A DNA stretch of 64,000 bases from Auanema rhodensis. Its lineage: Eukaryota > Animalia > Nematoda. The stretch spans positions 7,316,001 through 7,380,000 of the forward strand of contig OZ059894.1 in assembly GCA_964057225.1 (NCBI GenBank). The letters are read 5' to 3'. Below the pieces are notes generated by a model. It had not been told where the DNA came from, ran no database searches, and was given only the letters and a program-made list of their open reading frames with translations. This document shows, piece by piece, positions 10,253 through 29,197 of this stretch; position 1 is the first letter of the stretch; each line of letters starts with the position of its first letter. A program made the position numbers and the translations under genes.

Positions 10253-11684
10253 ACATTTTGCAATTTTTTAAAAAAACTAATCTCAGATTGACAATCTATT
10301 TGCTATGTTTTTTTTCAAATAGATATCAGCATGTAATGCCCAACGCTTTCAACCTCAAACTTTAATGAGGATCAGCTTTATGCGATTTTGTACATATGTA
10401 TATGATTTGTATAATTGTAACTACTTGGATCTGTTTCATCTGAACAAATAGGCAACGAACTGCTCAACTATCTTTCTATGTTTCCAAAACAACTCATGCC
10501 CATATTGCTTTCTAATTTCAAAAATTTCGATTATTAATGATCATCCTTATTCATATCGCATGAGATGTCAGTGAGCTTCTTCACATTTGAACGTTTGTTG
10601 AGTACCAGTTCGGCTATGATTTTTTTAGAAAAAAAAGCATTAACGAGTTTCATGGGTTGTCCAGTTGCTCTCTCACGTGTACTTACTTTCTAATCGTCTA
10701 CCGAAATTGATATTTCTTTAACGAATAGAAACTTTTACAAAAGTTTTAACATTTAAAACTGTTTATTTCTATGTTTTATTGACCGTTTTAGGAATCAATA
10801 GCATTAAAGGTTTTATATTATATATATTTCAAACACATTTCACTAAACATCATACAGTACTACAATGATATTGAAAAAAAAGTTATATACTTCACAGTTT
10901 GAGCTCCAAACTACATGTTATGTGCTGGTATGCTAACATATATGAGAGCTGGAAATATTTTTTGAATGATCCTACTTCTTTTCGGGAAAGTAAGTACGAG
11001 TTCGTTGTATATAGCAACACCTTCTTGTTAAACTCAGATTTGAAATATCATTTTGGCTCCAAAGAAGAGATCCTGTAGATCAAATTTCAAAGTAATAATT
11101 TTCAAAGTAATGTTTGCCTTTAGTGAAGGACTATGAGATATTGAATGAACTATTATTTTTTTATTTTTTGACTTCAAAACAAAACCCAAAATCAAAAATA
11201 TTTATTTTTTAAACTTTCATATCATTATTGGAACAGGTTTCGATCAAAGAAGTGCGAAGTTTTTCAGATTATATCAGTTTATTACCATAATTGATAGAAA
11301 ATATGCGCAAAACGATTGTTTTCTCTGTGTAATTATACTTGAAAACAACAAATCACCTGGTTAAGGGGTACATATATATATACCTTGAAATACAGAGTGA
11401 TATTCAGTACAGTTTGATTATAATTTAAACTGTGATTTACATATCGAAACACCATTTATTATTTGTACACAGTAATTTCGCTATCTTGGTGTTTTTCCTA
11501 AAATGATTTAGTTCAGTCTTTTGTTCTTCTTTGCTTTAAACTATGATGTCATTTTAGTTAATGTTCATCTGTAACTGATTTCTTTTTAAAAAAAATGTTT
11601 TATTAAACTTTTTATGTCCTTGTACCTATGATCATTCTATATAAAAGTTCTAACCAACATCTATTCAGATTTAAACCAATTAAG

Positions 11685-12339
11685 ATGTCTGTTCTTCGTT
11701 TGGTAAGATTATCTTTCAATTTCTAAACAATGATTTTCATTCTCAGATTATTGCTCTTGCAATTCTTGCTGTAACTATCGAAGCTGGTGTGAACTACCTA
11801 GTTAGAGAAGCTAGAAACAGTCCAGTTAAACCACGTCAGTTTCATCTTCATTTATCTTGAAATAGCATCAAGTTCAGAATGTGGTGAGAATGAGCAATTT
11901 ACCAACTGTGGAACTGCTTGTGAGCCCAAGTGTGGTGATCCAGAATTCGTATGACATTCACAATGAATTTTCTCTAAAAACGACTTTTTTAAAGATGGCA
12001 TGCACCCTTCAGTGTATCGTTAATGTTTGCCAATGCAAGCAAGGTTTTGCCCGGGACAGCCAAGGAATTTGTATTCCAAAGGAAGACTGTAACAAGGGTA
12101 AGTTTCTTTTCACAAAGTTTTTATTTAAAAAATATTGATCTTTTAATTTTTCAGGAAATTACTCTACACCTAAATGCCATCCATGTAAACCCAACGAGTA
12201 TTGCAAACTAGTACAGGTTAACTGCATACAAGCACCATGCCCTCCAATTCCCATGTGCACACCTCGGTTAGTTTTAAAATTTCTTCTTATAGAGGTTTCC
12301 TATAATTATAATTTAAAAATCATTTGTAGGTATCAATAA
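11685..12339 (+). CDS. Secreted TIL-domain protease inhibitor, type A copy 1 (loop C-T-L-Q-C) with C-terminal 6-Cys module
   Basis: Exons 11685-11702, 11747-11834, 11878-11948, 11995-12097, 12155-12266 and 12330-12339. Signal peptide MSVLRLIIALAILAVTIEA; 10-Cys TIL domain CGENEQFTNCGTACEPKCGDPEFMACTLQCIVNVCQCKQGFARDSQGICIPKEDC; then CHPCKPNEYCKLVQVNCIQAPCPPIPMC. TATATAAAAG at 11638 and a downstream AATAAA. Confidence 0.92.
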
Positions 12340-13318
12340 ACGAATCAGAAATCATCGACATGTGTATAAACATTTTTTTTTCATGTTTGTATTTACATCG
12401 ATTGAAAAACAAAATATACAATAAATCTTTCAAAGAATTTCTTTCTTTTTTCTTTCAAAATAACTGTGAAACAAAAGCTGAAATTGTGCTTCCGTACAAG
12501 GTCGTTCCAGCCTGTGAATAAGTTTAGGTCAGACTTCAACTTCTAGTTTGCTTCAAATTAGAGGTCCAAGCCTTATTGATTCTAAATTTGAGTGGGTTTG
12601 GATCTTCCAACTTGAATGACTTTAACGAACAGTCCTCGAGTTTGATGATAGAAGTTGAAGCTTCTACTTTTAGTACGACATAAGCGTTGGCTCTTGTTGT
12701 GTAAAGATCAAGTTTTATACTCTAGATAGTTCGAAATTGAAGTTCTGTCAAAGTCGTTCATTCCGTTTGTGAGTCAGAATACAGAAGAAACTTTCGTCGG
12801 GTCTGATGTTCGAAATCGGATTTGACTCAATTTACAGTACCGATCATATCCTACCACCCCTGAGATGTGTGGTGAATGGTGATCAGGCTGCAACTACTCG
12901 ACCACAAGTCATTTTGGGTTGATGGTAGGAAATTCGACTTCAATTGAGACTCGCTGGTTCAACTTCGCGTGGCTCCTTTCTTTTAGGAATGACTGCACAA
13001 CTCGGAAACAGATGAAGCGTCAACTTCGGCTGCAAGGCTGCATCGGAATGAATTGTTATTGACCATTTTCAATCAAAGATATCGTGAAGAACCCACGTTT
13101 GACTATGCTGAGTTGGCAAACAATCCAGTACACAGCTACTAGGGAGGTCATGTTTTTAAGATCATATCAGGTTTATCAGGTAAATTAAAGAGAGGAAAGA
13201 GTAATAAACAATATTTTTCCATTAAAAAGTAATTGAAATCGGTACTAAACTCTTTGATTAGACTGACTTTTCATATAAAAGCTCTGACCAACATCAGTTC
13301 GAACTCAACGAAATCAAG

Positions 13319-14021
13319 ATGTCTGCTCTTCGTTTGGTAAGCTTATTTGTGAATTTTTAAGAAATAATTTTCATTCTCAGATTATTGCTGTTGCAATTCT
13401 TGCTGTAACTATCGAAGCTGGAGTTAACTACCCAGCTCACAGAGCTAGAAACAGTCCACCTAGACCCCGTCAGTTTCAACTTCACTTATCATAACTTCAA
13501 ATTCCTGTTGCTTTAGAATGTGGAATCAACGAGCATTACACGAATTGTGGAACTGCTTGTGAGCCTAAATGTGGTGATCCAGAATTCGTATGACATTCTC
13601 AGTGAATTTTCTCTGAAAATGAATTTTTTTAAGATGCCATGTACTCTTCAATGCATCGTTGGTGTCTGTCAGTGCATTCATGGGCATTCAAGAAACAGCC
13701 AAGGAATCTGTATTCCAAATGAAGAATGTTACAACGGTGAGCAATCTGTTCTTGCTAAAGACATGGTTGATCTGAAAAAAATTGAAAAACTTATAATCAA
13801 ATCCTGAAATGCTGTTATTTCAGATCTTCCAGATTATTCCTACGACATAGCATGTAACAGACCATGTCCAAGAACCCATGTATGCCAATTTATGAATGAT
13901 TGCAGTCAAGGATATTGTAAAAAAATTCCTGTATGTGTATCCGCATTCCCTTACATGGTTAGTATATCAGAAGATATTTGAATTCGTTTAATTCTGATTT
14001 ATGTTTTAGCCATATCAGTAA
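13319..14021 (+). CDS. Secreted TIL-domain protease inhibitor, type B copy 1 (C-T-L-Q-C) with C-terminal 6-Cys module
   Basis: Exons 13319-13336, 13381-13468, 13517-13587, 13634-13736, 13824-13957 and 14010-14021, with the first four introns at the same positions as in type A. TIL CGINEHYTNCGTACEPKCGDPEFMPCTLQCIVGVCQCIHGHSRNSQGICIPNEEC; tail CNRPCPRTHVCQFMNDCSQGYCKKIPVC. Confidence 0.92.
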
Positions 14022-14191
14022 CTGGCGATAATCAATCCACATCCACATCCACATGTACTCAGATCGACATGTCTATAACCTTTTTTGTTTTTTCATGTTT
14101 GTATTTACATCGATTGAAAAACAAAATATACAATAAATATTAAAAAAATACGTTTTTTCTCTCACTCTTTCTTACTCTCTCTCTCTCGCTC

Positions 14192-14243
<52 letters not shown>

Positions 14244-15018
14244 TCGCTCTCTCGCTCTCTCTTTCATGTTCTCTCTCTATGGGTTAAAATCGATATTGGA
14301 AACTATCATCTGAAACTTAAACTCGAACTTGATCTTAACTTCAAAATGAGATTTTTAAGTTTTTGATTAAACCTAAGCTAGACTTTCAATAATTATCCTA
14401 CTTCTTATCGGGAAAGAAGCAGCAACATCTTCTGGTTAAACTCAGATTTGAAATGTCGTTTTGGCTCCAAAGATCAAATTTCAAAGTAATAATTTTCAAA
14501 GTAATGCTTTCCTTTAGTGAAGGACTATGAGATACTGAATGAACTATTATTTTTTTATTTTTTGACTTCAAAACAAAACCCAAAATCAAAAATATTTATT
14601 TTTTAAACTTTCATATCATTATTGGAACAGGTTTCGATCAAAGAAGTGCGAAGTTTTTCAGATTATATCAGTTTATTACCATAATTAAATCAAAATATGA
14701 GTAGCACAATGCTTTCCTGCAAAAAAGATTATTCAAAATCGTTTAAATGCCCCAAATATTTGGTATAAAAGCCATGTCTTTCCGGAAAGTCAGTTATATC
14801 AAGTTGAGATTTCCCATTGAACCTCTGAATCACTATTTCTATCATACTCTGATGTTTTTTCCAAAATACTGTGCTACTTAGGTTAATTTAGTTTCTCTGA
14901 CTAGACTGAACCAAGTTTTAAAAAAAAAATGTTTTATTAAACTTTTTATGTCCTTGTACCTATGATCATTCTATATAAAAGTTCTAACCAACATCTATTC
15001 AGATTTAAACCAATTAAG

Positions 15019-15673
15019 ATGTCTGTTCTTCGTTTGGTAAGATTATCTTTCAATTTCTAAACAATGATTTTCATTCTCAGATTATTGCTCTTGCAATTCT
15101 TGCTGTAACTATCGAAGCTGGTGTGAACTACCTAGTTAGAGAAGCTAGAAACAGTCCAGTTAAACCACGTCAGTTTCATCTTCATTTATCTTGAAATAGC
15201 ATCAAGTTCAGAATGTGGTGAGAATGAGCAATTTACCAACTGTGGAACTGCTTGTGAGCCCAAGTGTGGTGATCCAGAATTCGTATGACATTCACAAAGA
15301 ATTTTCTCTAAAAACCAATTTTTTCAAGATGCTATGCACTCGACAGTGTATCGTTAATGTTTGCCAATGCAAGCAAGGTTTTGCCCGGGACAGCCAAGGA
15401 ATTTGTATTCCAAAGGAAGACTGTAACAAGGGTAAGTTTCTTTTCACAAAGTTTTTATTTAAAAAATATTGATCTTTTAATTTTTCAGGAAATTACTCTA
15501 CACCTAAATGCCATCCATGTAAACCCAACGAGTATTGCAAACTAGTACAGGTTAACTGCATACAAGCACCATGCCCTCCAATTCCCATGTGCACACCTCG
15601 GTTAGTTTTAAAATTTCTTCTTATAGAGGTTTCCTATAATTATAATTTAAAAATCATTTGTAGGTATCAATAA
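15019..15673 (+). CDS. Secreted TIL inhibitor, type A copy 2 (loop C-T-R-Q-C)
   Basis: Copy of 11685-12339 at +3334; exon 4 begins ATG CTA TGC ACT CGA CAG TGT. Confidence 0.92.
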
Positions 15674-16652: not shown

Positions 16653-17355
16653 ATGTCTGCTCTTCGTTTGGTAAGCTTATTTGTGAATTTTTAAGAAATA
16701 ATTTTCATTCTCAGATTATTGCTGTTGCAATTCTTGCTGTAACTATCGAAGCTGGAGTTAACTACCCAGCTCACAGAGCTAGAAACAGTCCACCTAGACC
16801 CCGTCAGTTTCAACTTCACTTATCATAACTTCAAATTCCTGTTGCTTTAGAATGTGGAATCAACGAGCATTACACGAATTGTGGAACTGCTTGTGAGCCT
16901 AAATGTGGTGATCCAGAATTCGTATGACATTCTCAGTGAATTTTCTCTGAAAATGAATTTTTTTAAGATGCCATGTACTCTTCAATGCATCGTTGGTGTC
17001 TGTCAGTGCATTCATGGGCATTCAAGAAACAGCCAAGGAATCTGTATTCCAAATGAAGAATGTTACAACGGTGAGCAATCTGTTCTTGCTAAAGACATGG
17101 TTGATCTGAAAAAAATTGAAAAACTTATAATCAAATCCTGAAATGCTGTTATTTCAGATCTTCCAGATTATTCCTACGACATAGCATGTAACAGACCATG
17201 TCCAAGAACCCATGTATGCCAATTTATGAATGATTGCAGTCAAGGATATTGTAAAAAAATTCCTGTATGTGTATCCGCATTCCCTTACATGGTTAGTATA
17301 TCAGAAGATATTTGAATTCGTTTAATTCTGATTTATGTTTTAGCCATATCAGTAA
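16653..17355 (+). CDS. Secreted TIL inhibitor, type B copy 2
   Basis: Appears identical to 13319-14021 at +3334. Confidence 0.92.
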
Positions 17356-18348: not shown

Positions 18349-19003
18349 ATGTCTGTTCTTCGTTTGGTAAGATTATCTTTCAATTTCTAAACAATGATTT
18401 TCATTCTCAGATTATTGCTCTTGCAATTCTTGCTGTAACTATCGAAGCTGGTGTGAACTACCTAGTTAGAGAAGCTAGAAACAGTCCAGTTAAACCACGT
18501 CAGTTTCATCTTCATTTATCTTGAAATAGCATCAAGTTCAGAATGTGGTGAGAATGAGCAATTTACAAACTGTGGAACTGCTTGTGAGCCCAAGTGTGGT
18601 GATCCAGAATTCGTATGACATTCACAAAGAATTTTCTCTAAAAACCAATTTTTTCAAGATGCTATGCACTCGACAGTGTATCGTTAATGTTTGCCAATGC
18701 AAGCAAGGTTTTGCCCGGGACAGCCAAGGAATTTGTATTCCAAAGGAAGACTGTAACAAGGGTAAGTTTCTTTTCACAAAGTTTTTATTTAAAAAATATT
18801 GATCTTTTAATTTTTCAGGAAATTACTCTACACCTAAATGCCATCCATGTAAACCCAACGAGTATTGCAAACTAGTACAGGTTAACTGCATACAAGCACC
18901 ATGCCCTCCAATTCCCATGTGCACACCTCGGTTAGTTTTAAAATTTCTTCTTATAGAGGTTTCCTATAATTATAATTTAAAAATCATTTGTAGGTATCAA
19001 TAA
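18349..19003 (+). CDS. Secreted TIL inhibitor, type A copy 3 (C-T-R-Q-C)
   Basis: Copy at +6664; one synonymous ACC>ACA change seen relative to copy 2. Confidence 0.92.
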
Positions 19004-20885: not shown

Positions 20886-22207
20886 TCGCTCTCTCGCTCT
20901 CTCTTTCATGTTCTCTCTCTATGGGTTAAAATCGATATTGGAAACTATCATCTGAAACTTAAACTCGAACTTGATCTTAACTTCAAAATGAGATTTTTAA
21001 GTTTTTGATTAAACCTAAGCTAGACTTTCAATAATTATCCTACTTCTTATCGGGAAAGAAGCAGCAACATCTTCTGGTTAAACTCAGATTTGAAATGTCG
21101 TTTTGGCTCCAAAGATCAAATTTCAAAGTAATAATTTTCAAAGTAATGCTTTCCTTTAGTGAAGGACTATGAGATACTGAATGAACTATTATTTTTTTAT
21201 TTTTTGACTTCAAAACAAAACCCAAAATCAAAAATATTTATTTTTTAAACTTTCATATCATTATTGGAACAGGTTTCGATCAAAGAAGTGCGAAGTTTTT
21301 CAGATTATATCAGTTTATTACCATAATTAAATCAAAATATGAGTAGCACAATGCTTTCCTGCAAAAAAGATTATTCAAAATCGTTTAAATGCCCCAAATA
21401 TTTGGTATAAAAGCCATGTCTTTCCGGAAAGTCAGTTATATCAAGTTGAGATTTCCCCTTTTTTCAAATTACTGTCAATTTTAAATATTACATTGAAGTT
21501 TTTATATTTTTTTTGTTTTGTTTAGTTCAATATTCGAGAAAAATTATAAACTTGTTTTGGATTCATCAGACATATAAATTTCGAATGCTTCCAAAGCCTA
21601 AAATATTGAAACTTGCCAATAACTTTATGAGCTTAGATACAATCTTAAAAGTAACCTTTATTCAAAAATTACTTCTGGTATTCTAGATGAAATAAGTACT
21701 ATATTGCTGTTTTAATTGATTTTAGTATCCGTTTTCGACACTTTCAAATACTTTGTGAAAAGTTTATGAAGAACATTTAAGTAGAACAAACACTGAATGA
21801 ACTTTCATTGATCTTACAGTGATTTTTCATACTTATAAACATGGAATGACCTTAGTTATTACTAAAAGTATATAAAGAATTTTATTGTGACCAGGCAATC
21901 ATACTTGTTTGAGACAGTTAGGAATATTCGTCATATTTCAAACAATATTATCTTGTCTCACTGGTTATCTCCCGGTATTATGTTTCGCAATTCTACATTT
22001 GCTGTTTAAACCTCTGAATCACTATTTCTATCATACTCTGATGTTTTTTCCAAAATACTGTGCTACTTAGGTTAATTTAGTTTCTCTGACTAGACTGAAC
22101 CAAGTTTTAAAAAAAAAATGTTTTATTAAACTTTTTATGTCCTTGTACCTATGATCATTCTATATAAAAGTTCTAACCAACATCTATTCAGATTTAAACC
22201 AATTAAG

Positions 22208-22862
22208 ATGTCTGTTCTTCGTTTGGTAAGATTATCTTTCAATTTCTAAACAATGATTTTCATTCTCAGATTATTGCTCTTGCAATTCTTGCTGTAACTA
22301 TCGAAGCTGGTGTGAACTACCTAGTTAGAGAAGCTAGAAACAGTCCAGTTAAACCACGTCAGTTTCATCTTCATTTATCTTGAAATAGCATCAAGTTCAG
22401 AATGTGGTGAGAATGAGCAATTTACCAACTGTGGAACTGCTTGTGAGCCCAAGTGTGGTGATCCAGAATTCGTATGACATTCACAATGAATTTTCTCTAA
22501 AAACGACTTTTTTAAAGATGGCATGCACCCTTCAGTGTATCGTTAATGTTTGCCAATGCAAGCAAGGTTTTGCCCGGGACAGCCAAGGAATTTGTATTCC
22601 AAAGGAAGACTGTAACAAGGGTAAGTTTCTTTTCACAAAGTTTTTATTTAAAAAATATTGATCTTTTAATTTTTCAGGAAATTACTCTACACCTAAATGC
22701 CATCCATGTAAACCCAACGAGTATTGCAAACTAGTACAGGTTAACTGCATACAAGCACCATGCCCTCCAATTCCCATGTGCACACCTCGGTTAGTTTTAA
22801 AATTTCTTCTTATAGAGGTTTCCTATAATTATAATTTAAAAATCATTTGTAGGTATCAATAA
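22208..22862 (+). CDS. Secreted TIL inhibitor, type A copy 4 (C-T-L-Q-C)
   Basis: Copy at +10523 carrying the copy-1 version of intron 3/exon 4. Confidence 0.92.
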
Positions 22863-23841: not shown

Positions 23842-24535
23842 ATGTCTGCTCTTCGTTTGGTAAGCTTATTTGTGAATTTTTAAGAAATAATTTTCATTCT
23901 CAGATTATTGCTGTTGCAATTCTTGCTGTAACTATCGAAGCTGGAGTTAACTACCCAGCTCACAGAGCTAGAAACAGTCCACCTAGACCCCGTCAGTTTC
24001 AACTTCACTTATCATAACTTCAAATTCCTGTTGCTTTAGAATGTGGAATCAACGAGCATTACACGAATTGTGGAACTGCTTGTGAGCCTAAATGTGGTGA
24101 TCCAGAATTCGTATGACATTCTCAGTGAATTTTCTCTGAAAATGAATTTTTTTAAGATGCCATGTACTCTTCAATGCATCGTTGGTGTCTGTCAGTGCAT
24201 TCATGGGCATTCAAGAAACAGCCAAGGAATCTGTATTCCAAATGAAGAATGTTACAACGGTGAGCAATCTGTTCTTGCTAAAGACATGGTTGATCTGAAA
24301 AAAATTGAAAAACTTATAATCAAATCCTGAAATGCTGTTATTTCAGATCTTCCAGATTATTCCTACGATATAGAATGTGACAAACCATGTCCAAGAACCC
24401 ATGTATGCCAATTTATGGAAGATTGCAGCCAAGGATATTGCGAAAATGTTCCTGTATGTGCCCCTTACATGGTTAGTATATCAGAAGATATTTGAATTCG
24501 TTTAATTCTGATTTATGTTTTAGCCATATCAGTAA
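23842..24535 (+). CDS. Secreted TIL inhibitor, type B copy 4 (mosaic: B1-like exons 1-4, B5-like exon 5)
   Basis: Exon 5 (24347-24471) encodes ECDKPCPRTHVCQFMEDCSQGYCENVPVCAPYM, is 9 nt shorter than in B1-B3, and matches 29009-29133. Confidence 0.9.
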
Positions 24536-24670: not shown

Positions 24671-24984
24671 TTCTCTCACTCTCTCTCGCTCTCACTCTCT
24701 CTCTCGCTCTCACTCTCTCGCTCTCTCGCTCTCTCGCTCTCACTCTCTCTTTCATGTTCTCTCTCTCTCACTCTCTCGCTCTCTCGCTCTCTCGCTCTCA
24801 CTCTCTCGCTCTCTCGCTCTCTCGCTCTCACTCTCTCGCTCTCTCGCTCTCTCGCTCTCACTCTCTCGCTCTCTCTCTCTCTCGCTCTCTCGCTCTCTCG
24901 CTCTCACTCTCTCGCTCTCTCGCTCTCTCGCTCTCACTCTCTCGCTCTCTCTCTCTCTCGCTCTCTCTTTCATGTTCTCTCTCT
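24671..24984. repeat. Expanded compound (CT)n microsatellite with CTCG/CTCA variant units
   Basis: About 300 bp here versus ~100-125 bp at the homologous sites near 14160, 17490 and 20820. Confidence 0.95.
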
Positions 24985-26271
24985 ATGGGTTAAAATCGAT
25001 ATTGGAAACTATCATCTGAAACTTAAACTCGAACTTGATCTTAACTTCAAAATGAGATTTTTAAGTTTTTGATTAAACCTAAGCTAGACTTTCAATAATT
25101 ATCCTACTTCTTATCGGGAAAGAAGCAGCAACATCTTCTGGTTAAACTCAGATTTGAAATGTCGTTTTGGCTCCAAAGATCAAATTTCAAAGTAATAATT
25201 TTCAAAGTAATGCTTTCCTTTAGTGAAGGACTATGAGATACTGAATGAACTATTATTTTTTTATTTTTTGACTTCAAAACAAAACCCAAAATCAAAAATA
25301 TTTATTTTTTAAACTTTCATATCATTATTGGAACAGGTTTCGATCAAAGAAGTGCGAAGTTTTTCAGATTATATCAGTTTATTACCATAATTAAATCAAA
25401 ATATGAGTAGCACAATGCTTTCCTGCAAAAAAGATTATTCAAAATCGTTTAAATGCCCCAAATATTTGGTATAAAAGCCATGTCTTTCCGGAAAGTCAGT
25501 TATATCAAGTTGAGATTTCCCCTTTTTTCAAATTACTGTCAATTTTAAATATTACATTGAAGTTTTTATATTTTTTTTGTTTTGTTTAGTTCAATATTCG
25601 AGAAAAATTATAAACTTGTTTTGGATTCATCAGACATATAAATTTCGAATGCTTCCAAAGCCTAAAATATTGAAACTTGCCAATAACTTTATGAGCTTAG
25701 ATACAATCTTAAAAGTAACCTTTATTCAAAAATTACTTCTGGTATTCTAGATGAAATAAGTACTATATTGCTGTTTTAATTGATTTTAGTATCCGTTTTC
25801 GACACTTTCAAATACTTTGTGAAAAGTTTATGAAGAACATTTAAGTAGAACAAACACTGAATGAACTTTCATTGATCTTACAGTGATTTTTCATACTTAT
25901 AAACATGGAATGACCTTAGTTATTACTAAAAGTATATAAAGAATTTTATTGTGACCAGGCAATCATACTTGTTTGAGACAGTTAGGAATATTCGTCATAT
26001 TTCAAACAATATTATCTTGTCTCACTGGTTATCTCCCGGTATTATGTTTCGCAATTCTACATTTGCTGTTTAAACCTCTGAATCACTATTTCTATCATAC
26101 TCTGATGTTTTTTCCAAAATACTGTGCTACTTAGGTTAATTTAGTTTCTCTGACTAGACTGAACCAAGTTTTAAAAAAAAAATGTTTTATTAAACTTTTT
26201 ATGTCCTTGTACCTATGATCATTCTATATAAAAGTTCTAACCAACATCTATTCAGATTTAAACCAATTAAG

Positions 26272-27301
26272 ATGTCTGTTCTTCGTTTGGTAAGATTATC
26301 TTTCAATTTCTAAACAATGATTTTCATTCTCAGATTATTGCTCTTGCAATTCTTGCTGTAACTATCGAAGCTGGTGTGAACTACCCAGTTAGAGAAGCTA
26401 GAAACAGTCCAGTTAAACCACGTCAGTTTCATCTTCATTTATCTTGAAATAGCATCAAGTTCAGAATGTGGTGAGAATGAGGAATACACGAATTGTGGAA
26501 CTGCTTGTGAGCCCAAGTGTGGTGATCCAGAATTCGTATGACATCCACAATGAATTTTCTCTAAAAACCAATTTTTTCAAGATGCCATGCACTCGACAGT
26601 GTATTCTTAATGTTTGCCAATGTATCAACGGACATGCTAGAAACAGCCAAGGAATTTGTATTCCCAAAGACCAATGCGGAAACAGTCCAGTTAAACCACG
26701 TCAGTTTCATCTTCATTTATCTTGAAATAGCATCAAGTTCAGAATGTGGTGAGAATGAGGAATACACGAATTGTGGAACTGCTTGTGAGCCCAAGTGTGG
26801 TGATCCAGAATTCGTATGACATCCACAATGAATTTTCTCTAAAAACCAATTTTTTCAAGATGCCATGCACTCGACAGTGTATTCTTAATGTTTGCCAATG
26901 TATCAACGGACATGCTAGAAACAGCCAAGGAATTTGTATTCCCAAAGACCAATGCGGTAAAGGTGCATAGTTTTTCCACGAAACATCTGTAACTTTTTAT
27001 TTCTATTTGGATGAAAAAGAGAATCAGTAGCGTTTCTATAATAGTCTCATAAACAAAGAAACTGAGTTAGAAGAGAGTTTTAAAACATAGCTGAAACCAT
27101 AAAAAAATCTGTGAAAAGGCGCTCAATCGTTACTAGCCTTCCTATAAAATTTGAGTTTATGAAACAAAGCCATGCACTAGGAATACTTGTCATATGAACA
27201 ACGTTCACCAGCTAATTTATTTTACTACACAATTCAATACAAAATACGGTATATAGACTATTTTTTTTATAGAAACATCAGCAAGTGGCAAAAATCATTA
27301 A
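26272..27301 (+). CDS. Secreted two-TIL-domain protease inhibitor, type C (both loops C-T-R-Q-C), lacking the 6-Cys tail
   Basis: Type-A promoter and exons 1-2, then an exact 278-bp duplication (26401-26678 / 26679-26956) giving two identical TIL domains in frame. Proposed last exon 27273-27301 (ETSASGKNH*) followed by the family 3'UTR; unspliced read-through would stop at 26970. Confidence 0.85.
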
Positions 27302-28502: not shown

Positions 28503-29197
28503 ATGTCTGCTCTTCGTTTGGTAAGCTTATTTGTGAATTTTTAAGAAATAATTTTCATTCTCAGATTATTGCTGTTGCAATTCTTGCTGTAACTATCGAA
28601 GCTGGAGTGAACTACCCAGCTCACAGAGCTAGAAACAGTCCACCTAGACCCCGTCAGTTTCAACTTCACTTATCATAACTTCAAATTCCTGTTGCTTTAG
28701 AATGTGGAATCAACGAGGAATACACGGAGTGTGGAAGTGCTTGTGAGCCCAAGTGTGGCGATCCAGAAGTTGTATGACATTCTCAATGAATATCCTATCG
28801 AAACTAAATTGTTTTAAGGTACTATGCACTCTTCAATGCATCATTGGTGTCTGTCAGTGCATTCCTGGACATTCAAGAAACAGCCAAGGAATCTGTATTC
28901 CAGATGAAGAATGTAACAACGGTGAGCAATCTGATCTTGCTAAAGACATGGTTGATCTGAAAAAAATTGAAAAACTTATAATCAAATCCTGAAATGCTGT
29001 TATTTCAGATCTTCCAGATTATTCCTACGATATAGAATGTGACAAACCATGTCCAAGAACCCATGTATGCCAATTTATGGAAGATTGCAGCCAAGGATAT
29101 TGCGAAAATGTTCCTGTATGTGCCCCTTACATGGTTAGTATATCAGAAGATATTTGAATTCGTTTAATTCTGATTTATGTTTTAGCCATATCAGTAA
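28503..29197 (+). CDS. Secreted TIL inhibitor, type B copy 5 (diverged; loop V-L-C-T-L-Q-C)
   Basis: Same six-exon structure. TIL CGINEEYTECGSACEPKCGDPEVVLCTLQCIIGVCQCIPGHSRNSQGICIPDEEC; acidic tail as in B4. Confidence 0.9.

What the first reader, a model, noticed from the sequence alone, without database searches (positions are those of the whole stretch)
15298..15343. Reactive-site switching: a 46-bp patch flips the predicted P1 residue (Leu vs Arg) between otherwise near-identical inhibitor genes
Seen: A1/A4 versus A2/A3 differ by 9 substitutions packed into the end of intron 3 and the first five codons of exon 4 (MACTLQC vs MLCTRQC); the rest of the gene looks essentially identical by eye. 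The A2/A3 version shares CCAATTTTTTCAAG and ACT CGA with gene C. Known: in Ascaris-type TIL inhibitors the reactive bond lies between Cys5 and Cys6, with P1 Arg in the trypsin inhibitor and P1 Leu in the chymotrypsin/elastase inhibitor. Inference: short-tract gene conversion exchanges the specificity determinant like a cassette, so the array encodes both anti-trypsin-type and anti-chymotrypsin/elastase-type products on one scaffold.
Basis: partly seen in the sequence, partly recalled or inferred. Interest (0 to 1): 0.8.

Follow-up and report, generated by a model that had tools for sequence, protein, structure and literature searches.

The report
Reactive-site patch in worm inhibitor genes
Four almost identical, tandemly repeated nematode genes for small secreted protease inhibitors differ only in a 46-base patch that recodes the two main protease-contact residues (P4 Ala/Leu, P1 Leu/Arg). 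This is a clean new example of a long-known habit of inhibitor gene families: varying the reactive site through short exchanged DNA tracts.

Summary
The window holds a five-unit tandem array of TIL (Ascaris-type) inhibitor genes: A1-B1-A2-B2-A3-B3-A4-B4-C-D. The four A genes are intact (6 exons, 133 aa). A1/A4 differ from A2/A3 at exactly nine bases, all within 15298-15343: four in the end of intron 3 and five in codons 2, 4 and 5 of exon 4. The proteins differ only at P4 (Ala/Leu) and P1 (Leu/Arg). Exon 4 aligns CTRQC with CTREC of Ascaris trypsin inhibitor and CTMQC of the bee chymotrypsin inhibitor, so the P1 assignment holds. Nine of 14 unit differences in 46 bp has P <= 2e-11, and six of the nine changes are silent. 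This is a templated mosaic tract, not point mutation plus selection.

The Arg patch differs from C about as much as its flanks do (2/46 against 3/83). The Leu patch of A1/A4 is the outlier (7/46 from C) and has no donor anywhere in the genome. A clean D-like tract in B4 shows that such exchange does occur in this array. No reads, RNA data or orthologues could be obtained. This is a new member of a known phenomenon (reactive-centre hypervariability by conversion plus selection), and the function is untested.

The parts
11685..12339 (+). Gene A1 (ATG to stop): 6 exons, 133 aa, signal peptide + TIL domain + 6-Cys tail. Reactive loop MACTLQC (P4 Ala, P1 Leu).
   Evidence: GT-AG at all five introns, one terminal stop, 16 Cys
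11964..12009 (+). Leu-type patch in A1 (orphan tract; private states at the equivalents of 15318, 15325 and 15332).
   Evidence: no other copy in the genome
15019..15673 (+). Gene A2. Exons 15019-15036, 15081-15168, 15212-15282, 15329-15431, 15489-15600, 15664-15673. Reactive loop MLCTRQC (P4 Leu, P1 Arg).
   Evidence: Pfam TIL on exon 3 (E 5e-5, profile 1-22) and exon 4 (E 3.9e-6, profile 27-55)
15298..15343 (+). Arg-type patch in A2 (the finding). Intron 3 sites 15298, 15316, 15318, 15325; P4 codon 15332-15334; synonymous site 15340; P1 codon 15341-15343.
18349..19003 (+). Gene A3. Protein identical to A2; Arg-type patch at 18628-18673; private synonymous change at 18567.
22208..22862 (+). 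Gene A4. Protein identical to A1; Leu-type patch at 22487-22532.
26551..26596 (+). Patch-equivalent in the first TIL domain of gene C (MPCTRQC). Equals A2/A3 at 7 of the 9 sites.
26829..26874 (+). Patch-equivalent in the duplicated second TIL domain of gene C; same sequence as the first.
13646..13648 (+). P1 codon CTT (Leu) of B1. The same codon sits at 16980, 20310 and 24169 in B2-B4 and at 28831 in D. It serves as the outgroup state for the patch.
24369..24461 (+). D-like tract in B4: 11 substitutions and a 9-bp deletion relative to B1-B3, every one equal to D (29031-29123). Positive control for tract exchange in this array.

Best explanation
The window carries a young tandem array of secreted single-domain TIL (MEROPS I8, Ascaris-type) canonical serine-protease inhibitor genes in a rhabditid nematode. 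The four A copies share one scaffold, promoter and gene structure. They differ only in a 46-bp mosaic tract across the intron 3/exon 4 border, and this tract recodes P4 (Ala/Leu) and P1 (Leu/Arg) of the reactive-site loop. The tract was produced by non-reciprocal exchange between diverged paralogues (interlocus gene conversion or closely spaced recombination), not by point mutation. Both forms persist, most likely because two inhibitor specificities are useful: P1 Arg for trypsin-like enzymes, P1 Leu for chymotrypsin-, elastase- or subtilisin-like enzymes. On direction, the Arg patch is most simply the state A shares with C by descent or by an older, longer exchange. The Leu patch of A1/A4 is the tract that is foreign to its flanks; it would have been taken or kept from an older paralogue lineage that the assembly no longer holds. 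Shown: the array, the intact genes, the nine clustered differences, the TIL identity, the P1/P4 positions, the incongruence between patch and flanks, and tract exchange elsewhere in the array. Inferred: the direction, the action of selection, secretion, and the change in specificity.
For: Array and unit identity. Intact 133-aa genes differing only at residues 61 and 64. TIL identity. P1 register against 1ATA (CTREC), 1CCV (CTMQC) and 1EAI; loop position from PMC3606364. Clustering P <= 2.3e-11 and run test 8.7e-4. Six of the nine changes are silent (four intronic, ACC/ACT, third base of the P1 codon), so selection on amino acids alone cannot make the cluster. Distances in the 46-bp core: Leu-Arg 9, Leu-C 7, Leu-B 7, Arg-C 2. 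In the flanks A1 = A2, and A-C is 1/307 in 14922-15228. A-C divergence next to the patch is 3/83, which fits the Arg patch (2/46) but not the Leu patch (7/46). Unit variants support all three possible groupings: the patch gives U1U4|U2U3; sites 15834/15862 give U1U3|U2U4; sites 14169-14174 and the 547-bp segment give U1U2|U3U4. The units have therefore exchanged sequence. Positive control with a visible partner: B4 24369-24461 equals D at 11 substitutions plus a 9-bp deletion. Reactive-site-focused variation recurs. The B-like paralogue E differs from B at 5 bases in 10 bp (P1 Leu to Gln) within 333 bp that are otherwise identical. In a multi-TIL gene 6 Mb away, the exon that encodes the loop and the second half of each TIL repeat carries P1 Lys, Ala or Asn ahead of a near-identical remainder. 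The general mechanism is established in the literature: reactive-centre hypervariability attributed to gene conversion followed by selection (Ohta review PMC3966226).
Against: No donor for the Leu patch exists in the assembly, so its import is inferred rather than seen. The Arg patch is not an exact copy of C either (15298 and 15333 differ). With 46 bp and one genome the direction cannot be decided statistically. No orthologues were found to polarise the states. The specificity change rests on analogy; loop-graft chimeras on an Ascaris-type scaffold did not always take on the donor's profile.
Confidence: 0.6

Rival explanations
1. One reading: gene C, or a C-like copy, donated a 28-59-bp cassette to an A1-like gene, giving A2. 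A2 was then duplicated to A3. The Leu patch is the original A state.
For: A2/A3 share four derived states with C (15316 C, 15325 C, 15342 G, 15343 A), and the Leu codon CTT is the outgroup state in B and D. U2 and U3 are nearly identical and both lack the 547-bp upstream segment, which fits a recent duplication that carried the patch.
Against: The tract is not an exact copy of C (15333 inside it differs, and 15298 at its edge). Its 2/46 divergence equals the local A-C background of 3/83, so no recent transfer is needed. The supposedly original Leu patch would then have gained about four private changes in 28 bp, three of them silent, while the flanks gained almost none (expected about 0.5).
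Confidence: 0.22
2. An island left behind. Leu-type and Arg-type A genes are old lineages, about as old as the A/B split. Concerted evolution has homogenised everything around the reactive site, and selection for two specificities keeps the patch from being erased.
For: Leu-Arg divergence in the patch (9/46, 20%) matches A-B divergence (7-9/46 in the patch; about 20% over the gene). Exchange among units is extensive. The model is known for other families, where selected sites resist conversion (Ohta review).
Against: It needs conversion end points on both sides of the patch in every copy. A 46-bp sample gives wide error on the age. No population or cross-species data are available.
Confidence: 0.25
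3. Assembly artefact or alleles: the two forms are haplotypes of fewer loci, wrongly laid in tandem.
For: No read evidence could be obtained. Two sites (15834, 15862) pair U1 with U3 and U2 with U4, as a falsely duplicated two-unit block would.
Against: All four units carry private markers: six private substitutions in U3 (one in A3, five in the A3-B3 spacer), the D-like tract and microsatellite expansion in U4, and the 547-bp segment in U3 and U4 only. All copies lie inside one 24.7-Mb contig, and no alternative haplotig was found. Even under a two-haplotype reading, each haplotype (U1-U2, U3-U4) would hold one Leu and one Arg gene, so they would still be paralogues.
Confidence: 0.06
4. A single untemplated complex mutation (a cluster from error-prone repair, or a local template switch) created one of the patches.
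For: The Leu patch has no template in the genome.
Against: No inverted or direct quasi-repeat in the window could template it; only chance words of 10-12 bases were found. Three of the Leu-patch states (15316 G, 15342 T, 15343 T) equal the B-type outgroup state, and the Arg patch matches C. This points to homologous templates.
Confidence: 0.05

Closest known systems
Ascaris trypsin inhibitor (PDB 1ATA), Ascaris chymotrypsin/elastase inhibitor C/E-1 (1EAI) and Apis chymotrypsin inhibitor AMCI (1CCV): TIL, MEROPS I8
   Same: Ten-cysteine TIL domain. A three-residue loop between Cys V and Cys VI with P1 in the middle. CTRQC aligns with CTREC of ATI, and CTLQC with CTMQC of AMCI.
   Different: These genes add a 6-Cys C-terminal module that matches no family. 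Their activity is untested. Here the two P1 forms sit on an otherwise identical scaffold in one array, whereas the Ascaris proteins are diverged from one another. That ATI has P1 Arg31 and C/E-1 has P1 Leu31 is from my own knowledge, plus the alignment register.
Reactive-centre hypervariability of serine protease inhibitors (Hill and Hastie 1987; Ohta 1994, as cited in PMC3966226)
   Same: Paralogues that are conserved everywhere except around P1. Silent sites are raised as well as replacement sites, which has been attributed to interlocus gene conversion followed by selection.
   Different: Described for serpins and other families, not for nematode TIL genes. Here the contrast is extreme (0 differences outside the patch, 9 within 46 bp), and the tract spans an intron/exon border.
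Mutually exclusive reactive-centre-loop exons of insect serpin-1 (Jiang et al. 1994, cited in PMC3966226)
   Same: One scaffold combined with alternative reactive-site modules. The reactive loop begins at an exon boundary.
   Different: In serpin-1 the cassettes are alternative exons of one gene, chosen by splicing. Here each form is a separate complete gene with one exon 4.
Potato type II inhibitor repeats (PMC2259423)
   Same: Tandem repeats under concerted evolution, with P1 hypervariable and positively selected.
   Different: A different fold, in plants, and the repeats lie within one protein.
SjAPI loop-graft chimeras (PMC3606364)
   Same: An experimental swap of P2-P1-P1' on an Ascaris-type scaffold changes which proteases are inhibited; grafts can add trypsin inhibition.
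   Different: Engineered rather than natural, and the profiles did not fully follow the grafted loop. This is a caveat for predicting what A1 and A2 inhibit.

Membership tests
TIL / Ascaris-type inhibitor (Pfam PF01826, MEROPS I8) | Sequence match to the TIL profile | tested here: met
   Exons searched separately. Exon 3: E 5e-5, 23.8 bits, profile positions 1-22. Exon 4: E 3.9e-6, 27.3 bits, profile positions 27-55; cutoff 24.5 bits.
TIL / Ascaris-type inhibitor (Pfam PF01826, MEROPS I8) | Ten cysteines in the family spacing | tested here: met
   Exons 3 and 4 hold Cys I-IV and Cys V-X. The whole protein has 16 Cys, six of them in the tail.
TIL / Ascaris-type inhibitor (Pfam PF01826, MEROPS I8) | Canonical reactive loop between Cys V and Cys VI, with P1 as the middle residue | tested here: met
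   CT[R/L]QC aligns with CTREC (1ATA residues 29-33) and CTMQC (1CCV). Rule taken from PMC3606364.
TIL / Ascaris-type inhibitor (Pfam PF01826, MEROPS I8) | Tight-binding inhibition of serine proteases | not testable with these tools
   Needs recombinant protein and enzyme kinetics.
Interlocus (ectopic) gene conversion tract | Differences clustered in a short tract between otherwise identical paralogues | tested here: met
   9 of 14 unit differences fall in 46 bp; P <= 2.3e-11.
Interlocus (ectopic) gene conversion tract | Tract and flanks give conflicting relationships | tested here: met
   Patch: A2-C 2, A2-A1 9. Flanks: A2-A1 0, A-C 1/307 and more. Run test 8.7e-4.
Interlocus (ectopic) gene conversion tract | An identifiable donor that carries the tract | tested here: inconclusive
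   Arg patch: C matches 7/9, no better than the local background. Leu patch: no donor in the 181-Mb assembly. A clear partner does exist for the B4 tract, namely D.
Positively selected reactive-centre hypervariability | Variation concentrated at P1 and its neighbours across paralogues | tested here: met
   P4-P1': A1 ACTLQ, A2 LCTRQ, C PCTRQ, B PCTLQ, E PCTQQ, D LCTLQ. Multi-TIL gene with P1 K/A/N ahead of a near-identical second half of the domain.
Positively selected reactive-centre hypervariability | Excess of replacement over silent change (dN > dS) at the loop | tested here: inconclusive
   Only five exonic changes (three replacement-type, two silent) plus four intronic; too few for a test.
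Alternative-exon reactive-site cassettes (serpin-1 type) | Several alternative loop exons within one transcription unit | tested here: not met
   Each A gene has a single exon 4 and its own TATA-bearing upstream region and stop.

The most novel reading that the evidence does not exclude
The 46-bp patch is an ancient specificity island. On this reading, Leu-type and Arg-type reactive-site lineages are as old as the A/B gene split. Selection has kept them apart while concerted evolution erased all other divergence between the copies. This would be a paralogue-level analogue of long-term balanced polymorphism, and related species should carry the same two patch lineages.
Probability: 0.25. Interest if true: 0.55.

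Novelty: new member of a known kind. Interest (0 to 1): 0.4.

Why it matters
A1 and A2 form a natural two-residue swap (P4 and P1) on an otherwise identical TIL scaffold. That makes them a ready-made pair for testing how far P1 and P4 alone set specificity in this inhibitor family. The array also shows, at single-base resolution, how exchange between tandem copies and selection at a specificity site combine. It does not reveal a new mechanism: reactive-site hypervariability by conversion and selection has been described since the 1980s-90s.

Tried and rejected
There is no read-level test of paralogy and no expression or splice evidence.

2. Orthologues. A library-wide HMMER search with exon 4 returned mostly multi-TIL proteins. 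The six most similar hits I looked up were five strongylid nematode proteins (Nippostrongylus, Teladorsagia, Cooperia, Ancylostoma) and one flea protein, at no more than 66% identity. No orthologue was found that could polarise the patch states.

3. Donor for the Leu patch. A DNA search of the whole genome with 131 bp around the A1 patch and a protein search with A1 exon 4 found only the array members, one B-like paralogue 112 kb upstream, and distant TIL genes.

4. Local template-switch origin. I searched for words of 10-14 bases that cover the variant sites, on both strands of the window. Only homologous positions and a few chance words of 10-12 bases turned up.

5. The other two sites with the U1U4|U2U3 pattern (16099, 16142). 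Compared with the regions upstream of D and E, they show no consistent partner.

6. Exon 5 module. No significant Pfam match (best hit Opy2, E 0.44) and no Atlas match.

7. Literature. No paper in the library gave the residue numbers Arg31-Glu32, Leu31-Met32 or Met30-Gln31. No paper on reactive-site patches in nematode TIL genes was found.

8. Joined model. The spliced exons were translated only inside a local script. They were never sent to a search or folding tool; all searches were done exon by exon, by reference. No structure was therefore predicted.

Full report
**What is in the window**

A BLAST of the A2 gene against the window, and a self-comparison of 8-32 kb, show a tandem array with a period of about 3.33 kb.
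- A-type genes start at 11606, 14940, 18270 and 22129.
- B-type genes, about 80% identical to A, start at 13273, 16607, 19937 and 23796.
- A fifth, older unit holds C (26193) and D (28457). C has an internal 278-bp duplication that gives it two TIL domains.

Units U1-U4 are 98-99.9% identical. The window is G000:C1:7316001-7380000 of a 181-Mb assembly in 112 contigs. Introns are short with GT-AG ends. An earlier agent's note calls the organism an Auanema-like rhabditid nematode; I did not check this.

**Gene model**

For A2 the exons are 15019-15036, 15081-15168, 15212-15282, 15329-15431, 15489-15600 and 15664-15673.
- All four A genes have GT-AG at every intron and one terminal stop.
- Each encodes 133 aa with a hydrophobic N-terminus (MSVLRLIIALAILAVTIEAG) and 16 cysteines.
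- The sequence shows a TATATAAAAG box about 45 bp before the ATG, conserved in A, B, C and D.
- An AATAAA overlaps the stop codon.

The joined model was translated only in a local script.

**Family and P1 position**

- Exon 3 matches positions 1-22 of Pfam TIL (E 5e-5). Exon 4 matches positions 27-55 (E 3.9e-6).
- Against solved structures, A2 exon 4 aligns CTRQC with C29-T30-R31-E32-C33 of Ascaris trypsin inhibitor (1ATA, E 1e-4) and with CTMQC of the bee chymotrypsin inhibitor (1CCV).
- A1 exon 4 hits 1CCV best. It also hits the Ascaris chymotrypsin/elastase inhibitor 1EAI, in a register that puts its Leu at residue 31.

The switched residue 64 is therefore P1. Residue 61, just before Cys V, is P4. 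That ATI has P1 Arg31 and C/E-1 has P1 Leu31 is from my own knowledge; the library held no paper with those residue numbers.

**The observation**

In a four-unit alignment, the pattern U1 = U4 versus U2 = U3 occurs at nine substitutions between 15298 and 15343 and nowhere else in the A gene.
- Four lie in the last 31 bases of intron 3.
- Two lie in the P4 codon (GCA/CTA).
- One is synonymous (ACC/ACT).
- Two lie in the P1 codon (CTT/CGA).

The only other difference among the four genes is a private synonymous change in A3 (18567). The proteins differ only as A61L and L64R. With 14 substitutions between U1 and U2 over about 3320 sites, nine in one 46-bp window has P <= 2.3e-11. Six of the nine changes are silent, so selection on point mutations cannot explain the cluster. 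It is a tract.

**Which tract is foreign**

Differences in the 46-bp core:

| Pair | Differences |
|---|---|
| Leu-type vs Arg-type | 9 |
| Leu-type vs C | 7 |
| Leu-type vs B | 7 |
| Arg-type vs C | 2 |
| Arg-type vs B | 9 |

- In the flanks A1 = A2, and A differs from C at 1 of 307 sites (14922-15228).
- The run of seven sites where A2 = C is significant (P = 8.7e-4).
- The direction does not follow from this. Next to the patch (15241-15297 and 15344-15369), A and C differ at 3 of 83 sites. The Arg patch differs from C at 2 of 46, the same level. The Leu patch differs at 7 of 46.
- With B, E and D as outgroups, Arg-type and C share four derived states (15316 C, 15325 C, 15342 G, 15343 A).
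- The Leu type keeps outgroup states there and adds its own at 15318, 15325 and 15332. Its state at 15340 is shared only with E.
- If the Leu patch were the native A state, about four changes, three of them silent, would have accumulated in 28 bp while the flanks stayed almost unchanged.
- If the Arg patch is native, the Leu patch needs a donor, and none exists in the assembly.

I lean towards the second reading or its close relative, an old Leu lineage kept while the flanks were homogenised. One genome cannot decide between them.

**Exchange is common in this array**

- Unit variants support all three possible pairings of the four units. The patch pairs U1 with U4. Sites 15834 and 15862 pair U1 with U3. 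Sites 14169-14174 and a 547-bp segment pair U1 with U2. That segment (21458-22004 = 25522-26068) is 100% identical in its two copies and absent before A2 and A3.
- B4 differs from B1-B3 by 11 substitutions and a 9-bp deletion within 24369-24461. Every one equals D (29031-29123), while the 5' part of B4 is B-like. This is a conversion tract with a visible partner.
- C is itself a mosaic. It is A-like up to the equivalent of 15228. It is B/D-like over 15229-15240. It is 37% different from A beyond 15370.

**Reactive-site variation recurs**

- A B-type paralogue 112 kb upstream (E, in L011) is 95.5% identical to B1. At the loop it differs at 5 bases in 10 bp, within 333 bp that otherwise carry no difference. 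This gives P1 Gln, and three of the five states match the A1 type.
- A multi-TIL gene at C1:13.41 Mb has tandem repeats in which the exon for the loop and second half of the domain is near-identical after the loop, with loops TCTKEC (four times), ICTADC (four times) and FCTNEC (twice).

**Comparison with what is known**

- Ohta's review attributes reactive-centre hypervariability in protease inhibitors to gene conversion followed by selection. It notes the serpin alternative-exon cassettes, and cases where selection blocks conversion (PMC3966226).
- Pot II inhibitors show concerted evolution with a positively selected P1 (PMC2259423).
- Loop grafts on an Ascaris-type scaffold change the inhibition profile, but not exactly as the loop predicts (PMC3606364).
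- I found no report of this pattern in nematode TIL genes.

The finding is a very clean new member of a known kind.

**Limits**

- Even if U1-U2 and U3-U4 were two haplotypes wrongly joined, each would hold one Leu and one Arg gene, so the two forms would still be paralogues.
- No orthologues were obtained.
- Function is inferred by analogy only.

**Verdict**

I put 0.6 on the stated explanation. Interest is 0.4.

Noticed in passing
window 24369-24461 (B4) and 29031-29123 (D): B4 carries a D-like tract in its exon 5 region: 11 substitutions and a 9-bp deletion relative to B1-B3, all identical to D. Its 5' part stays B-like. This is a clear conversion or double-recombination tract with a visible partner.
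   Followed up: yes
L011:1166-2033 (G000:C1:7203267-7204134); loop at L011:1574-1583: A lone B-type paralogue (E) lies 112 kb upstream, 95.5% identical to B1. Its loop reads PCTQQC (P1 Gln). Five differences fall within 10 bp, inside 333 bp that are otherwise identical to B; three of the five states match the A1 type.
   Followed up: partly
L012 (G000:C1:13412337-13418904, minus strand): A multi-TIL gene or cluster with tandem repeats 354 and 381 bp apart. The exon for the loop and second half of each TIL repeat is near-identical after the loop, but the loops differ: TCTKEC four times, ICTADC four times, FCTNEC twice, plus CTRQC, CTKQC, CTEQC, CTDQC, CTSQC and CSLQC. An intron precedes the loop in each repeat.
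   Followed up: partly
window 21458-22004 and 25522-26068: A 547-bp segment lies upstream of A4 and of C. Its two copies are 100% identical, and it is absent upstream of A2 and A3. Its only other, weak (72%) match in the genome lies about 1 kb from another TIL exon at C1:8.16 Mb.
   Followed up: partly
window 26070-26685 (gene C, first domain): C is a mosaic. It differs from A at 1 of 307 sites up to the equivalent of 15228. It carries B/D-like states at the equivalents of 15229-15240. In the 3' part of exon 4 it differs at 23 of 62 sites. It also lacks the A-type exon 5/6 tail at the aligned position.
   Followed up: partly
window 15489-15600 (exon 5 of A2; equivalents in A1, A3, A4): The C-terminal module has six cysteines (C-x2-C-x5-C-x6-C-x5-C-x6-C). 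It has no significant Pfam match (best hit Opy2, E 0.44) and no Atlas hit. B-type genes carry a different six-Cys tail.
   Followed up: partly
window 14177-14216 (U1) and 24692-24922 (U4): A CT-rich compound microsatellite ((CT)n interrupted by G or A) differs greatly in length between units. It is about 190 bp longer in U4 and shorter in U3.
   Followed up: no
L013 (G000:C1:7196159-7202713): About 6.5 kb of satellite-like repeats (spacings near 184 and 261 bp) lie directly upstream of paralogue E. Each repeat has a 65-bp, 75% match to window 12923-12985, in the A-B spacer.
   Followed up: no
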